NCBI RefSeq assembly: GCF_001194135.2
Contig: NC_068993.1
Location: forward strand, 51,435,370 to 51,477,706
DNA length: 42,337 nucleotides
Direction: 5' to 3'
DNA from: Octopus bimaculoides
Taxonomy: Eukaryota
Part shown: positions 19,022-40,576 of the stretch, piece by piece
How positions within the stretch are numbered: the stretch's first letter is position 1
Layout of the letters: the number at the start of each line of letters is the position of its first letter
Position numbers and translations under genes: made by a program
Notes under the pieces: model-generated
Database searches by the model: none
What the model saw: only the letters and a program-made list of their open reading frames with translations
Told to the model about the DNA's origin: nothing

Positions 19022-20168
19022 GTTTGACTTTTGTTTTGCATTTGTACAAGTTGGATCCAAGTCTCACCCAGAGACCTCAAGAGACAACAAGTTAGAAGTT
19101 CATGTAGGTGTTATGCCTAGGGTACCATATATTTGGATTTGTACAGTTTTGTTCAAGTGAATGTTTAAGAAACCATNNNNNNNNNNNNNNNNNNNNNNNN
19201 NNNNNNNNNNNNNNNNNNNNNNNNNNNNNNNNNNNNNNNNNNNNNNNNNNNNNNNNNNNNNNNNNNNNNNNNNNNNNNNNNNNNNNNNNNNNNNNNNNNN
19301 NNNNNNNNNNNNNNNNNNNNNNNNNNNNNNNNNNNNNNNNNNNNNNNNNNNNNNNNNNNNNNNNNNNNNNNNNNNNNNNNNNNNNNNNNNNNNNNNNNNN
19401 NNNNNNNNNNNNNNNNNNNNNNNNNNNNNNNNNNNNNNNNNNNNNNNNNNNNNNNNNNNNNNNNNNNNNNNNNNNNNNNNNNNNNNNNNNNNNNNNNNNN
19501 NNNNNNNNNNNNNNNNNNNNNNNNNNNNNNNNNNNNNNNNNNNNNNNNNNNNNNNNNNNNNNNNNNNNNNNNNNNNNNNNNNNNNNNNNNNNNNNNNNNN
19601 NNNNNNNNNNNNNNNNNNNNNNNNNNNNNNNNNNNNNNNNNNNNNNNNNNNNNNNNNNNNNNNNNNNNNNNNNNNNNNNNNNNNNNNNNNNNNNNNNNNN
19701 NNNNNNNNNNNNNNNNNNNNNNNNNNNNNNNNNNNNNNNNNNNNNNNNNNNNNNNNNNNNNNNNNNNNNNNNNNNNNNNNNNNNNNNNNNNNNNNNNNNN
19801 NNNNNNNNNNNNNNNNNNNNNNNNNNNNNNNNNNNNNNNNNNNNNNNNNNNNNNTGTTGTTGGCATATACGACATAATGGGGAGTTGCCGTTCTTTAATA
19901 TGTTGGCCTGGTAGTTCTTTGTAGGTAGGCATTGATCTTGGGCTGCTATGATAAACCCCTCTGTTTCTGATTTCAAGCCAGAGGCCATTAACCATTGGTG
20001 AGTAAGGGCTTTGTCAATATCTGCATTATTCGCGCTCTTTGGGTATTTGCCATTGAGAGGTTTTCCATGCCATTTTTCAGTCATAATATCTAAGGCAGCA
20101 ATTTTTGCACGGGTTTTCAAGCGCTTAGCTTTTTCTGCAGATGTTTCTAGTTCGTCTAATTCTTGAAT
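19019..20168 (-). mobile_element. 5'-truncated Dong/R4-clade (RLE) non-LTR retrotransposon with a gap in the middle
   Basis: Open frame IQELDELETSAEKAKRLKTRAKIAALDIMTEKWHGKPLNGKYP...HQWLMASGLKSETEGFIIAAQDQCLPTKNYQANILKNGNSPLCRICQQ matches the post-RT region and CCHC start typical of R4/Dong. The 3'UTR contains GAGGTCTCTGGGTGAGACTTGG, and (TAA)n lies on both sides. Confidence 0.88.
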
Positions 20169-20750: not shown

Positions 20751-20885
20751 GACATACATTACGCTTATTTCTAGAAAATTATATTCAAACATCTCGGCCT
20801 TTAGAAAGGTCGTGTGACAATTGAAATGTTTAGAGACACACCTCTAGTAAGGATATACACTATATATATAGACATATATATACAC

Positions 20886-20942
<57 letters not shown>

Positions 20943-20964
20943 TATACATTCTTCTTCTTCTTTT

Positions 20965-21098
20965 TTCCACCGAGGTCGACATTGCCTTTCATCCTTTCGG
21001 GGTCGATAAATTAAGTACCAGTTGTGTATTGGAGTCGATTTAATCGACTGGTCTCCTACCCTAAAATTTCGGGCCTTGTGCCTAGAATAGAAAAGATG

Positions 21099-21161
<63 letters not shown>
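20965..21161 (+). mobile_element. 5'-truncated Meta-core-like SINE with a long (ATT)n tail
   Basis: CCGAGGTCGACATTGCCTTTCATCCTTTCGGGGTCGATAAATTAAGTACCAG...GGCCTTGTGCCTAGAATAGAAAAG then (ATT)n. Confidence 0.9.
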
Positions 21162-21163
<2 letters not shown>

Positions 21164-21240
21164 ACGCGGCTCCAAATAACAAACGTGTAATTAAAATGAA
21201 AGCCACATCTTATTTTACAGCGAATTTGTGNNNNNNNNNN

Positions 21241-21648
21241 GGCGGTGGTGGCGGCGGTGGTGGTAGTGGAGGTAGTGGTGGTGGTGGAAATGGTGATGAT
21301 GGTGATGATGATGAAAAGAGGGAAGAGGAGTGGAAAGAAGAGAAGGAGCAGGAGGAGGAGGAGGAAGAACAGAGGGAGGAGGATGAAGACGGGGAGGAGG
21401 ATAATAATAATAGCGGCAGCAATTTGGACGGTGATCATCATGATGAATATGATGATTGTGAATACGAAGGAGTTGATGGCAACGGTTATAATTGGGGGTG
21501 ACAGGGGAGAAGGTGGGACTAGCGGGAGCTGCGACAGCGACGGCGATGGTGTTGACTAAGACGAAAACGAAGGCGACAACAGCGAAAGTGATGCTGCTGC
21601 TGATGATGATGATGACGATGACGATGACGATGACGATGATGATGATGG

Positions 21649-21679
<31 letters not shown>

Positions 21680-21716
21680 GACGGCGACGACGACGTTGAT
21701 GATGATGATGATGAAT

Positions 21717-21749
<33 letters not shown>

Positions 21750-21800
21750 TCAACTACGATGACGGCGTCGGGGATAACCACAAGAATGACGATGTTGGTG
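21241..21800. repeat. Purine-rich trinucleotide field (GGT)/(GAG)/(GAT)/(GAC)n
   Basis: Read directly. Confidence 0.92.
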
Positions 21801-22184
21801 CGAATGATGACGAAAATTACATCAAATATACAGTTTGGAAATAATAAACAAATTTCAAATATTAATAACATTTCATAGGATGTTACTTATGAGTTTAAAA
21901 ACTGAAATTAAATTTAATTTAATTTAATTCTGTATTTGACTCCAGATAATTATAGTAATATTCAGAAATTTTCCTAGCAATTTTAACAGCCAAGTTATTT
22001 ATCATTGCAACTGTATCTATATGTGTATATGTCTATACATACACACATACATGCATGCATATATGTATGTTTCTATGTATGTTTGTTTGCGTGTATGCCT
22101 ATTTGTGTGTACGTACGCATACAAGACGGTTGAGAGATGGCAAGTCCATGTGTGTGCATTTGTTCATTTGCAAATTATAAATTA

Positions 22185-38261: not shown

Positions 38262-39139
38262 NNNNNNNNNNNNNNNNNNNNNNNNNNNNNNNNNNNNNNN
38301 NNNNNNNNNNNNNNNNNNNNNNNNNNNNNNNNNNNNNNNNNNNNNNNNNNNNNNNNNNNNNNNNNNNNNNNNNNNNNNNNNNNNNNNNNNNNNNNNNNNN
38401 NNNNNNNNNNNNNNNNNNNNNNNNNNNNNNNNNNNNNNNNNNNNNNNNNNNNNNNNNNNNNNNNNNNNNNNNNNNNNNNNNNNNNNNNNNNNNNNNNNNN
38501 NNNNNNNNNNNNNNNNNNNNNNNNNNNNNNNNNNNNNNNNNNNNNNNNNNNNNNNNNNNNNNNNNNNNNNNNNNNNNNNNNNNNNNNNNNNNNNNNNNNN
38601 NNNNNNNNNNNNNNNNNNNNNNNNNNNNNNNNNNNNNNNNNNNNNNNNNNNNNNNNNNNNNNNNNNNNNNNNNNNNNNNNNNNNNNNNNNNNNNNNNNNN
38701 NNNNNNNNNNNNNNNNNNNNNNNNNNNNNNNNNNNNNNNNNNNNNNNNNNNNNNNNNNNNNNNNNNNNNNNNNNNNNNNNNNNNNNNNNNNNNNNNNNNN
38801 NNNNNNNNNNNNNNNNNNNNNNNNNNNNNNNNNNNNNNNNNNNNNNNNNNNNNNNNNNNNNNNNNNNNNNNNNNNNNNNNNNNNNNNNNNNNNNNNNNNN
38901 NNNNNNNNNNNNNNNNNNNNNNNNNNNNNNNNNNNNNNNNNNNNNNNNNNNNNNNNNNNNNNNNNNNNNNNNNNNNNNNNNNTTATATATATATATATAT
39001 ATATAATACAAAATGGGACAAGAACGCAAAACATCCAGACAGTTAGGTGATACAAAAATGGGACAAGAAAACATCCCGATAGACGATACAAAGAAAACAA
39101 GGACGGGTCATTCGGAGTTTTCTTTCTTCAGTACAAAGT

Positions 39140-39292
39140 GCTTCTTTCAGTTTCCGTCTACAAAATCCACTCACAAGCCTTTGGTAGGCTCGAAACTATA
39201 GTAGAAGACATTTGCCCGAGGTGCCACGCGGTAGGACTGAACCCCGAACCATGTGGTTGAGAAGTAAGCTTCGTACGACAGAGTCACGCGGC
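39140..39292 (-). mobile_element. OR2-like CORE SINE 5' part
   Basis: Plus strand CTTCTTTCAGTTTCCGTCTACAAAATCCACTCACAAGCC...TATAGTAGAAGACATTTGCCCGAGGTGCCACGCGGTAGGACTGAACCCCGAACCATGTGG. Confidence 0.85.
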
Positions 39293-39875
39293 AGCTTAAG
39301 TATGAATACAAATATTCATTTTAGAGTAATTCACACCAAATATGTTCACCCTGGCCAATAAACCCACATTTTGGAACCACTTATGATGTGGAAAAAATAA
39401 TAAAGGTAAAATAAACACGTAATCAAGCGCTCTTTAGACCCACAAATACGGAATATCGTTGTCCAGATAAAAGTCGGGTTACATCTTAGGTTTTTATATA
39501 GCACAAAGTACATTTTTATATCGATTTCATATGAATAATACATTCTCCCAAATTCGGCATCACACACCACCTATATAGCTACATTAGACTTTTAATGGAA
39601 CACTTAATGCATAGAAACAATGACCGTAAAACACACATACACACACATATATACAAATATCACATGTAAATGGGGACACACACACACACACACTCAGGCA
39701 ATGACATGTACAGGGGTTACTAACGCAACTTGCGTCTGCGCACATAGTAACTGTCGTTCGCTTTTCTTGTAATTATGGCTAGCAATGTACCAAAACGTTT
39801 ATTGCATTGCATCATACACACACACTGGAAAAGTAGATATAAGATTGCCAAGATTTTGTCTCTCATCAAAGATCA

Positions 39876-39934
39876 GTGGCTATCGAACGCCGACGAAGGG
39901 AAATAACCCTGAAACCCGGGTCCGTTCGTGCTAC
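39876..39934 (+). ncRNA. Type I hammerhead ribozyme candidate, U4C core variant, palindromic stem III
   Basis: Stem I CGAACG(39884-89)/CGTTCG(39923-28), extended by GTGGC/GCTAC across an internal loop. Core CCGACGA(39890-96). Stem II AGGG-AAATAA-CCCT. GAAA(39911-14). Stem III ACCCGGGT palindrome. GUC triplet with predicted cleavage after 39922. Confidence 0.75.
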
Positions 39935-40576
39935 AGGTCATGATGGGAGGGATAACTTCCCTTGGCAAACAGGACACAATAGTGTGTCGATAAGCCAGCT
40001 GGAGGAGATGTCCTCCTGGGGCTAAAAGCAACAGTAACATCCACCCCTAGGGGTCAGCCACACTTAAGTGGCAATATACTACACTTTATCGTGCAGTTAC
40101 TGTTAATACTTCATTTAGAGAATTAACATTGCTNNNNNNNNNNNNNNNNNNNNNNNNNNNNNNNNNNNNNNNNNNNNNNNNNNNNNNNNNNNNNNNNNNN
40201 NNNNNNNNNNNNNNNNNNNNNNNNNNNNNNNNNNNNNNNNNNNNNNNNNNNNNNNNNNNNNNNNNNNNNNNNNNNNNNNNNNNNNNNNNNNNNNNNNNNN
40301 NNNNNNNNNNNNNNNNNNNNNNNNNNNNNNNNNNNNNNNNNNNNNNNNNNNNNNNNNNNNNNNNNNNNNNNNNNNNNNNNNNNNNNNNNNNNNNNNNNNN
40401 NNNNNNNNNNNNNNNNNNNNNNNNNNNNNNNNNNNNNNNNNNNNNNNNNNNNNNNNNNNNNNNNNNNNNNNNNNNNNNNNNNNNNNNNNNNNNNNNNNNN
40501 NNNNNNNNNNNNNNNNNNNNNNNNNNNNNNNNNNNNNNNNNNNNNNNNNNNNNNNNNNNNNNNNNNNNNNNNNNNN

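What the first reader, a model, noticed from the sequence alone, without database searches (positions are those of the whole stretch)
39876..39934. Complete type I hammerhead ribozyme with a non-canonical CCGACGA core and dimer-type stem III
Seen: every hammerhead element is present in order with perfect pairing. These are a 6-bp stem I plus a 5-bp extension beyond a TAT/T internal loop, a 4-bp stem II with a 6-nt loop, GAAA and a GUC site. Known: the canonical core is C3-U4-G5-A6-N7-G8-A9, so position 4 is C here. Stem III (ACCCGGGU) would leave a 2-nt loop but is a perfect palindrome, the hallmark of minimal hammerheads that cleave as dimers (newt satellite 2, Penelope-associated and metazoan retrozyme types). 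Inference: either an active natural core variant in a cephalopod repeat family or a single-copy inactivating mutation.
Basis: partly seen in the sequence, partly recalled or inferred. Interest (0 to 1): 0.9.

Follow-up and report, generated by a model that had tools for sequence, protein, structure and literature searches.

The report
Variant hammerhead ribozyme in octopus repeat
This short stretch folds like the self-cutting "hammerhead" RNA that many animal mobile repeats carry, but two of its normally fixed letters are changed, so it is most likely a weakened or dead copy of a well-known kind of element.

Summary
Window 39876-39934 (+) has every hammerhead element in order, and helix I continues out to 39861/39948 (about 23 bp).

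- **Architecture:** it matches the canonical metazoan type I hammerhead: helix I 6 bp, helix II 4 bp with a 6-nt loop, and a short palindromic helix III that needs a dimer.
- **Independent support:** a covariance model built from one published Nematostella hammerhead finds the motif as the top hit (23.6 bits, E about 5e-4).
- **Against:** no Rfam family matches. There are two consensus deviations, not one: U4>C, and A10.1-U11.1 in place of G10.1-C11.1.
- **Second copy:** the only other copy I could recover is translated antisense in an Octopus bimaculoides gene model. It keeps both deviations. All eight differences I could infer preserve the predicted fold, including one compensatory U-A>C-G change.

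C4 is therefore a family trait rather than a private mutation. The literature says U-turn substitutions strongly reduce cleavage.

Most likely this is a hammerhead domain of a structured interspersed repeat of the retrozyme or Penelope-pLTR type, with weak or lost catalysis. It is a new member of a known kind and of modest interest. Cleavage and genome-wide copy statistics could not be tested here.

The parts
39861..39880 (+). Distal 5' strand of the extended helix I. It forms three sub-helices: 39861-68, 39871-74 and 39876-80.
   Evidence: MFE folds, with helix coordinates. It pairs with 39930-39948. It contains G.U pairs that make the fold strand-specific.
39881..39883 (+). UAU, the 5' side of internal loop 1 and a candidate tertiary-contact bulge.
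   Evidence: The same UAU precedes the 6-bp helix I in the published Nematostella 'typical' hammerhead and is aligned to it by model R1.
39884..39889 (+). Helix I proximal 5' strand, CGAACG.
   Evidence: Six Watson-Crick pairs with 39923-39928.
39890..39896 (+). Catalytic core 5' half, C3 C4 G5 A6 C7 G8 A9. The consensus has U at position 4.
   Evidence: C4 (39891) is also fixed in the paralog by an Arg codon.
39897..39910 (+). Helix II hairpin AGGG-AAAUAA-CCCU. It is closed by A10.1-U11.1, where the consensus is G-C.
   Evidence: A10.1 (39897) is also fixed in the paralog by a Leu codon.
39911..39913 (+). G12 A13 A14 of the core.
39914..39921 (+). Helix III, ACCCGGGU, a perfect 8-nt palindrome. 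As a monomer it gives only 2 bp plus a CCGG loop. As a dimer it gives an 8-bp intermolecular helix.
   Evidence: The cofold MFE of two copies uses it as an intermolecular helix.
39922..39922 (+). C17. The predicted cleavage is between 39922 and 39923.
   Evidence: Position in the motif. Cleavage itself was not tested.
39923..39948 (+). 3' strand of helix I: proximal CGUUCG, the bulged U 39929, then the three distal sub-helices.
39949..40133 (+). Downstream, strongly structured part of the same repeat unit. It holds hairpins at 39973-88, 40001-16, 40043-54 and 40057-72. It is cut off by an assembly gap at 40134.
   Evidence: The fold of 39860-40133 has z = -4.5. The paralog similarity runs at least to 40021.
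39695..39860 (+). Upstream structured flank that possibly belongs to the same unit. It starts right after a (CA)n tract. Membership is uncertain.
   Evidence: The fold of 39695-40133 has z = -5.5, with the ends 39697-39703 and 40127-40133 paired. There is no paralog information for this part.

Best explanation
**What it is.** This is the hammerhead-ribozyme domain of a structured, non-coding interspersed repeat in an octopus genome. The repeat resembles the animal non-LTR retrozyme or Penelope-like pLTR class. At least 39861-40021 belongs to it, and probably about 39695-40133 and beyond.

**How it works.**
- On the + strand RNA the domain forms a long, interrupted helix I, a 4-bp helix II and a helix III too short to be stable alone.
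- A single copy is therefore trapped in an inactive hairpin. In the predicted MFE, C3-G5 pair with 39917-39919.
- Two copies, in tandem or in trans, can pair their ACCCGGGU palindromes into a double hammerhead.
- Cleavage would follow after C17 (39922|39923) by the usual G12/G8 acid-base mechanism. It would leave a 2',3'-cyclic phosphate and a 5'-OH end at 39923.
- In retrozymes such monomers are ligated into circles and copied by a retrotransposon reverse transcriptase.

**State of this copy.** Two of the most conserved positions are changed: U4>C in the uridine turn, and G10.1-C11.1>A-U. Both were already present in the ancestor of the two copies I could compare. Catalysis is therefore most likely slow or lost, and this solitary copy is probably a relic.

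**Shown:** the motif, the strand-specific fold, the dimer prediction, the shared variant positions and the fold-preserving substitutions.

**Inferred:** transcription, cleavage, circularisation, mobility and reduced activity.
For: - **Motif and coordinates:**. It is the only hit of my descriptor in the window.
- **Chance expectation:** about 0.004 or fewer hits per window.
- **Architecture:** it equals the published definition of canonical metazoan type I hammerheads (PMC4209133).
- **Segment-by-segment match to the Nematostella 'typical' hammerhead:** UAU bulge, 6-bp helix I, N7=C, 4-bp helix II, 6-nt NAAYAA loop and palindromic helix III.
- **Model from that sequence alone:** the motif is the top hit at 23.6 bits, E about 5e-4. 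The next hit scores 14 bits.
- **Strand-specific stability:** + strand -34.8 kcal/mol (z = -4.0) against - strand -25.3 kcal/mol (z = -0.9).
- **Larger unit:** z = -4.5 to -5.5.
- **Dimer:** -47.9 kcal/mol against 2 x -20.2, and the MFE is the double hammerhead.
- **Second copy:** residues 24-74 of P0001 (O. bimaculoides A0A0L8G4E9) are the antisense translation of a paralog of 40021-39869. Identity is 84% with no indels, and the window copy carries a stop codon, so it is a different locus.
- **Shared variants:** back-translation fixes C4 and A10.1 in the paralog.
- **Substitutions:** back-translation gives 8 forced differences. U39877-A39933 becomes C-G (compensatory). Four differences (39915, 39937, 39943, 39946) are single-sided changes that keep pairing, either to or from G.U. 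Two fall in unpaired positions.
- **Permutation test:** P = 0.044 for no broken pair, and P = 0.002 for no broken pair with at least 5 pairs touched.
- **Composition:** the unit is 44% GC, within the under-45% reported for animal retrozymes.
- **Reduced activity expected:** U4C 'considerably decreases activity in vitro' (PMC3088659). All U-turn single and double mutants except the C3:G8 swap have low activity (PMC9901934). The Aedes cCgauga variant is among the inactive RNAs (I matched primer names to the Fig. S7 list, which is an inference).
Against: - No Rfam hammerhead family matches even at E<=10 on 79 nt.
- The motif fails the published type I RNAMotif descriptor on both the core and helix III.
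- Only one other copy was found, and it is known only through a protein translation. One third of its bases are unseen.
- There is no second copy in the window and no tandem partner in the assembled 1.15-kb island.
- No Penelope-like or other reverse-transcriptase ORF is recognisable nearby.
- Retention of C4 and A10.1-U11.1 in both copies, together with fold-preserving changes, could equally mean the variant core is functional.
- The model's E-value is rough, and the model rests on a single reference sequence.
Confidence: 0.6

Rival explanations
1. It is an active natural core variant. The octopus family uses a C4 / A10.1-U11.1 hammerhead that still self-cleaves as a dimer at biologically useful rates. 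The long helix I and the loop contacts would compensate for the altered core.
For: - C4 and A10.1 are shared by both comparable copies, and every inferred substitution preserves the fold, including one compensatory pair.
- Perreault et al. report that a U4C viroid hammerhead, although poor in vitro, supports infectivity. They argue that tertiary contacts can offset variant cores.
- The UAU bulge and the A-rich 6-nt loop 2 resemble those of an active-type cnidarian hammerhead.
Against: - U-turn substitutions give low activity even in a tertiary-stabilised hammerhead.
- A natural Aedes cCgauga variant is listed among the inactive RNAs.
- A second conserved pair (10.1-11.1) is also changed.
- Two copies sharing a state shows common descent, not selection.
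- There is no expression or cleavage evidence.
Confidence: 0.2
2. It is a chance look-alike. The stretch is just a long imperfect hairpin inside a structured repeat, or another hairpin RNA, that happens to contain GAAA, a near-core heptamer and a small side hairpin. It has no hammerhead ancestry.
For: - Rfam finds nothing.
- Two consensus positions are off.
- One-mismatch look-alikes are expected at about 0.05 per Mb, which is tens to hundreds per octopus-sized genome.
- The fold-preserving substitutions support the long hairpin, not catalysis.
Against: - The joint occurrence of all features was never seen in 200 Mb of random sequence. Those features are a 6-bp helix I, a 4-bp helix II with a 6-nt loop, GAA, an A...U palindromic helix III, H17 and the helix I extension.
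- The motif matches feature by feature a real Nematostella hammerhead, including parts my descriptor does not require (UAU bulge, loop 2 composition). The model gives E about 5e-4.
Confidence: 0.12
3. It is a protein-coding exon read on the minus strand, as in the octopus anion-exchanger gene model. In that case the RNA structure is incidental.
For: P0001 begins with 74 residues that translate an antisense copy of the element.
Against: - The window copy has stop codons in that frame, at 40022-24, 39938-40 and 39866-68.
- The repeat-derived N-terminus has no Pfam domain, and Band_3_cyto starts only at residue 98.
- No other protein in 5.8 billion shares it.
- The structure is specific to the + strand.
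Confidence: 0.03

Closest known systems
Canonical metazoan type I hammerheads of non-LTR retrozymes and satellite-like repeats (Nematostella, coral, mussel, newt/axolotl, Schistosoma Sm-alpha)
   Same: - Type I topology.
- 6-bp helix I followed by a UAY-type bulge and a further helix.
- 4-bp helix II with a 6-nt A-rich loop.
- Very short palindromic helix III that requires a dimer.
- Embedded in a structured non-coding unit of a few hundred nt with under 45% GC.
   Different: - The core has C4 instead of U4, and A10.1-U11.1 instead of G10.1-C11.1.
- No tandem repeat is visible. The copy is solitary next to an assembly gap.
- No Rfam match.
- Copy number and circRNA expression are unknown.
Minimal hammerheads in the pLTRs of Penelope-like elements
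   Same: They are dimer-dependent, have a palindromic or absent helix III, show low in vitro activity and are associated with retroelements that insert into microsatellites.
   Different: [quoted passage not shown] This motif has the canonical 4-bp helix II and no extra base.
- No PLE ORF is present in the window.
Natural U4C core variants: a viroid hammerhead (Ambros & Flores 1998, cited in PMC3088659) and the Aedes aegypti 'cCgauga' hammerhead-like RNA
   Same: The same substitution at core position 4 in an otherwise recognisable natural hammerhead.
   Different: - The viroid variant is a type III hammerhead in a replicating RNA and retains function in vivo.
- The Aedes copy is a PLE-type motif and is listed as inactive.
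- Here the substitution is shared by two genomic copies and comes with a second deviation.

Membership tests
Hammerhead ribozyme (core consensus) | 5' core C3-U4-G5-A6-N7-G8-A9 | tested here: not met
   The sequence is CCGACGA, with C at position 4 (39891). The other six positions fit.
Hammerhead ribozyme (core consensus) | G12-A13-A14, an A15.1-U16.1 pair, and H17 at the cleavage site | tested here: met
   GAA at 39911-13, A39914 pairing with U39921, and C39922.
Hammerhead ribozyme (core consensus) | Highly conserved G10.1-C11.1 pair closing helix II | tested here: not met
   A39897-U39910. The conservation of this pair is stated in PMC4209133 and PMC3088659.
Hammerhead ribozyme (core consensus) | Three helices around the core in type I order (helix I open) | tested here: met
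Hammerhead ribozyme (core consensus) | Match to the Rfam hammerhead covariance models (Hammerhead_1, _3, _II, HH9, HH10) | tested here: not met
   No match at the gathering score, nor at E<=10 on 601 nt or on 79 nt.
Hammerhead ribozyme (core consensus) | Published type I RNAMotif descriptor (Perreault 2011): cuganga core, and helix III of at least 3 bp with a loop of at least 3 nt | tested here: not met
   It fails on C4 and on helix III, which gives either 2 bp + 4 nt or 3 bp + 2 nt. All other clauses are satisfied.
Hammerhead ribozyme (core consensus) | Site-specific self-cleavage giving 2',3'-cyclic phosphate and 5'-OH ends | not testable with these tools
   This needs in vitro transcription and cleavage assays, or end-mapping of cellular RNA.
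Canonical metazoan type I hammerhead | Helix I 6 bp, helix II 4 bp, helix III 1-2 bp capped by a 2-4 nt palindromic loop (PMC4209133) | tested here: met
   6 bp, 4 bp, and A-U plus C-G capped by CCGG.
Canonical metazoan type I hammerhead | Conserved loop 1 / loop 2 nucleotides for the tertiary contact | tested here: inconclusive
   The UAU bulge and loop AAAUAA parallel UAU and UAACAA of the Nematostella typical hammerhead, and are aligned to them by model R1 at 23.6 bits. No structural or functional test was possible.
Animal non-LTR retrozyme | Short tandem repeats (about 170-400 bp units), dimers to multimers | tested here: inconclusive
   There is no internal repeat in 39695-40133 and no second copy in the window. 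The unit is cut by a 443-N gap at 40134. Solo monomers are also described.
Animal non-LTR retrozyme | Low GC (under 45%), non-coding, strongly structured unit | tested here: met
   GC is 44%. The fold has z = -4.5 to -5.5. The ORFs have no Pfam domain.
Animal non-LTR retrozyme | Multi-copy family in the genome, expressed as circRNA | not testable with these tools
   No cephalopod genome or transcriptome is searchable here. Only one further copy was seen indirectly.
Penelope-like element pLTR hammerhead | Located in a pLTR flanking an RT + GIY-YIG ORF | tested here: not met
   No RT or GIY-YIG domain was found in the ORFs of at least 90 aa scanned in the window. Gaps could hide one.

The most novel reading that the evidence does not exclude
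Octopus genomes carry a family of retrozyme-like repeats whose hammerhead has a fixed, functional C4 / A10.1-U11.1 core. This would be a natural uridine-turn variant that still cleaves, as a dimer. It would be maintained by selection, as suggested by the fold-preserving and compensatory substitutions between copies.
Probability: 0.15. Interest if true: 0.55.

Novelty: new member of a known kind. Interest (0 to 1): 0.3.

Why it matters
Hammerheads in animal repeats are common and well described, so a further example in an octopus is not surprising in itself. I found no paper in the held library that describes cephalopod hammerheads or retrozymes.

The mildly interesting point is that two near-invariant positions, U4 and the 10.1-11.1 pair, are changed in both copies that could be compared, while the surrounding fold is preserved.

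- If the family proves active, it would be a natural test case for how peripheral structure rescues a defective uridine turn.
- If it proves inactive, it would show that such repeats can persist or spread without an efficient ribozyme. That bears on the open question of what hammerheads actually do for Penelope-like elements and retrozymes.

It also flags a probable annotation artefact. An antisense copy of the repeat is translated as the N-terminus of an octopus anion-exchanger gene model.

Tried and rejected
- **Rfam cmscan:** whole window at gathering score, 601 nt and 79 nt at E<=10. There was no hammerhead match, only chance hits to mir-4928, SNORD34 and ClpQY.
- **Other copies in the window:** none, by pattern search with 3 mismatches and by self-BLAST. 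Only a neighbouring SINE-like piece is repeated.
- **Exact look-up of seven ORFs across the motif in the 15-billion protein collection:** none present.
- **Six-frame concatenated protein search:** one true hit, P0001.
- **Search with P0001's N-terminus:** nothing.
- **Look-up of P0001's encoding contig:** not on record, so the paralog's DNA could not be read.
- **Exhaustive HMMER search with the sense-frame ORF:** only spurious hits to RCC1-like and SprB-like repeat proteins. I rejected these as chance similarity.
- **DNA pattern scans:** two in metagenome contigs and one each in viral and prokaryotic genome contigs. All gave zero matches.
- **ARAGORN on the island:** no tRNA-like head, so a tRNA-SINE origin is not supported.
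- **Pfam on the ORFs:** no RT or GIY-YIG domain.
- **CpG observed/expected as an age indicator:** uninformative.
- **Coding-exon reading:** considered and rejected (see rivals).
- **Nematostella helix III register:** I could not resolve it, because the published sequence has GAAAA with one extra A. I therefore do not use that part of the comparison.

Full report
**1. Observation**

Window 39876-39934 (+) reads GTGGC TAT CGAACG CCGACGA AGGG AAATAA CCCT GAA ACCCGGGT C CGTTCG T GCTAC.
- a 6-bp Watson-Crick helix I (39884-89 with 39923-28);
- a UAU/U internal loop;
- a 5-bp extension (39876-80 with 39930-34, one G.U);
- the heptamer core with C at position 4 (39891);
- a 4-bp helix II with a 6-nt loop;
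- G12 A13 A14;
- the 8-nt palindrome ACCCGGGU as helix III;
- a GUC site with C17 at 39922.

Two things were missed:
- Helix I continues for another 4 + 8 base pairs out to 39861/39948, giving an interrupted helix of about 23 bp.
- Helix II is closed by A10.1-U11.1 rather than G10.1-C11.1. That pair is the most conserved in hammerheads after A15.1-U16.1 (PMC3088659; PMC4209133).

The motif therefore departs from the consensus at two positions, not one.

**2. Chance**

A descriptor of my own required a core with at most one mismatch, helix I of at least 5 bp, helix II of at least 3 bp, GAAA, and a U-H site. It finds exactly this one site in the window on either strand, and no canonical-core site.

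In 200 Mb of first-order Markov sequence with the window's composition:
- 10 sites had a one-mismatch core with helix I of at least 6 bp and helix II of at least 4 bp;
- 1 of them also had a palindromic helix III;
- 1 had a helix I extension of at least 5 bp;
- none had both, and none had a canonical core.

For the 75 kb of non-N sequence on both strands this predicts about 0.004 sites, or about 0.0004 or fewer with the extra features. The same rates predict tens to hundreds of bare one-mismatch look-alikes in a genome of a few Gb. The count alone therefore cannot settle the matter if this window was picked from a whole genome.

**3. Independent signs that it is a real hammerhead-type domain**

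*Architecture.* Published work defines most metazoan hammerheads as type I motifs with helix I of 6 bp and helix II of 4 bp. The two helices interact through loop nucleotides. Helix III has 1-2 bp capped by a 2-4 nt palindromic loop, which makes the monomer inefficient and a two-copy dimer active (PMC4209133). The motif here fits that exactly: 6 bp, 4 bp, and A-U plus C-G capped by CCGG.

*Comparison with a bona fide example.* The Nematostella "typical" hammerhead was recovered from primer JP_304 in Table S1 of PMC3088659. Laid side by side, the two sequences are:

| Segment | Nematostella | Window |
|---|---|---|
| Bulge | UAU | UAU |
| Helix I 5' | GCCAUG | CGAACG |
| Core | CUGACGA | CCGACGA |
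| Helix II 5' | GUCC | AGGG |
| Loop 2 | UAACAA | AAAUAA |
| Helix II 3' | GGAC | CCCU |
| G12-A14 | GAA | GAA |
| Helix III | (A)ACAGCUGU | ACCCGGGU |
| Position 17 | C | C |
| Helix I 3' | CAUGGU | CGUUCG |

The segment lengths are the same, the UAU bulge is the same, N7 is C in both, loop 2 is A-rich in both, and helix III is palindromic in both.

A covariance model built from that single Nematostella sequence and its structure was run over the whole window with filters off. It gives 39881-39930 (+) as the top hit, full length, at 23.6 bits and E about 5e-4. This E-value is rough. The next hit scores 14 bits.

*Strand specificity.* The 88-nt domain 39861-39948 folds to -34.8 kcal/mol on the + strand (z = -4.0, 0 of 200 shuffles as good). 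The reverse complement reaches only -25.3 kcal/mol (z = -0.9). This is what G.U pairs in a real RNA structure produce.

*Larger context.* The wider stretch is also unusually structured. z is -4.5 for 39860-40133 and -5.5 for 39695-40133.

**4. Against**

- No Rfam family, hammerhead or otherwise, matches at the gathering score.
- No hammerhead match appears even at E<=10 on 601 nt or on 79 nt.
- The motif also fails the published type I RNAMotif descriptor. That descriptor demands cuganga and a helix III of at least 3 bp with a loop of at least 3 nt.

I attribute the Rfam miss to the two consensus deviations plus the minimal helix III.

**5. A second copy**

No other copy exists in the window. 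DNA pattern scans of the metagenome, viral and prokaryotic collections found nothing.

I then ran a protein search with all six reading frames of 39695-40133 joined together. It gave one hit, P0001 = UniRef A0A0L8G4E9_OCTBM, an Octopus bimaculoides "anion exchange protein".
- Residues 24-74 of P0001 align without gaps to the minus-strand translation of 40021-39869, at 84% identity.
- The window copy has a stop codon in that frame.
- The rest of the protein is not encoded in the window.
- The Band 3 domain starts only at residue 98, and the N-terminus has no domain.

The gene model has therefore absorbed an antisense paralog of this repeat. This also places the window in, or close to, an octopus genome. 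The paralog's DNA could not be fetched.

Codon-by-codon back-translation fixes 74 of 153 bases and forces 8 differences:
- **Position 4:** the codon covering core positions 3-5 is Arg in both copies. A canonical CUG would read Gln. The paralog therefore also has C4.
- **Position 10.1:** the Leu codon fixes A10.1 as well.
- **Compensatory pair:** U39877>C and A39933>G are partners in the helix I extension, so U-A becomes C-G.
- **Changes that keep pairing:** C39915>U in helix III (C-G to U.G), G39937>A, A39943>G and G39946>A in helix I (each with a U partner).
- **Unpaired positions:** 39940 and 39981 lie in a bulge and a hairpin loop.

I reassigned the same eight substitution types to random positions with the same original base. 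This gives no broken pair in 4.4% of trials. It gives no broken pair with at least 5 pairs touched in 0.2% of trials.

The comparison is limited to one pair of copies and to amino-acid-visible changes. Even so, it says two things. C4 and A10.1 are ancestral to both copies, and the + strand fold has been preserved.

**6. Mechanism**

As a monomer, the hammerhead fold costs -13.6 kcal/mol against an MFE of -20.2 kcal/mol. In that MFE, C3-G5 are sequestered by pairing with 39917-39919.

Two copies cofold to -47.9 kcal/mol, against 2 x -20.2. The MFE structure of the dimer is the classical double hammerhead. It has an 8-bp intermolecular helix III, swapped helix I strands and both helix II hairpins. 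This agrees with the dimer mechanism established for newt, viroid and Penelope-associated hammerheads.

Cleavage, if it happens, would fall between 39922 and 39923. In animal retrozymes such monomers are circularised and are thought to be mobilised by Penelope-like elements.

Several lines of evidence suggest poor activity:
- The U4C substitution is reported to decrease activity considerably in vitro, although a viroid carrying it stays infectious.
- A natural Aedes "cCgauga" variant appears among the constructs listed as inactive hammerhead-like RNAs. I matched primer names to the Fig. S7 list, and that step is my inference.

With a second deviation at 10.1-11.1 and no tandem partner in the assembled island, I judge this copy most likely a slow or dead ribozyme. 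The island spans 38983-40133, between gaps of 721 and 443 N.

**7. What the element is**

The unit is non-coding, 44% GC and strongly structured. It starts just after a (CA)n tract and runs into an assembly gap. That fits an animal non-LTR retrozyme or a pLTR-derived fragment.

The defining tandem arrangement, copy number and circRNA could not be tested. No reverse-transcriptase or GIY-YIG ORF is recognisable in the window, and no tRNA-like head was found. I therefore say that it works like a retrozyme-type hammerhead domain, and I do not claim membership of that family.

**8. Novelty and verdict**

The following are all already known:
- hammerheads in animal repeats;
- dimer-type helix III;
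- isolated U4C variants.

I found no description of cephalopod hammerheads or retrozymes in the searchable library. This is a new member of a known kind, with a core variant shared by at least two copies.

The hammerhead and dimer-type readings hold, and C4 is not a private mutation. The claims of completeness and of high interest are overstated.
- Interest is 0.3.
- The most novel reading still open is a selected, active C4 core family, at about 15%.

Noticed in passing
window 39144-39287; also 10776-10867 (+) and 12257-12357 (-): A roughly 100-140 nt interspersed repeat lies 600 nt upstream of the motif and recurs twice more in the window at 74-77% identity. It looks SINE-like. From memory it resembles the abundant octopus SINE, but I did not verify that. 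Similar translated fragments appear at 2865-3401, 20844-21206 and 30953-31237.
   Followed up: partly
P0001 (UniRef A0A0L8G4E9_OCTBM) residues 1-97; equivalent to window 40021-39869 (-): The N-terminus of an Octopus bimaculoides anion-exchanger gene model is the antisense translation of a copy of this repeat. It has no Pfam domain, and Band_3_cyto starts at residue 98. No other protein shares it. This is probably an annotation artefact or an exonised repeat.
   Followed up: partly
window 38262-38982 and 40134-40576 (and 13 further N runs, 4,889 N in all): The motif sits on a 1,151-bp island between two assembly gaps, and the structured unit is cut off by the downstream gap. Collapsed tandem copies could be hidden there.
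   Followed up: no
window 19855-20120 (-): This ORF fragment (…GFIIAAQDQCLPTKNYQANILKNGNSPLCRICQQ) runs into a 678-N gap. From memory it resembles the C-terminal zinc-binding tail of non-LTR retrotransposon ORF2 proteins. Pfam gave no hit.
   Followed up: partly
window 21196-21878 (both strands): Long acidic (D/E-rich) and Gly-rich low-complexity reading frames built on GAT/GAA/GGT trinucleotide repeats. They could be a coding exon or just microsatellite.
   Followed up: no
window 12585-12738 and 31067-31220: A 154-nt inverted repeat pair, 80% complementary and 18 kb apart. These are probably two copies of the same interspersed repeat in opposite orientation.
   Followed up: no
whole window: The window is extremely rich in microsatellites: (TA)n, (CA)n, (GATA)n, (TAA)n, (TAC)n, (CTT)n and (CCTA)n. 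Overall GC is 36% and CpG observed/expected is about 0.8. This is eukaryotic, short-read-assembly style sequence.
   Followed up: no
window 39949-40133 (+): A chain of tight hairpins lies downstream of the hammerhead domain: 39973-88, 40001-16, the CCCCTAGGGG palindrome at 40043-54, and GCCAC…GTGGC at 40057-72. The last repeats the GTGGC of the helix I extension. Their function is unknown.
   Followed up: partly
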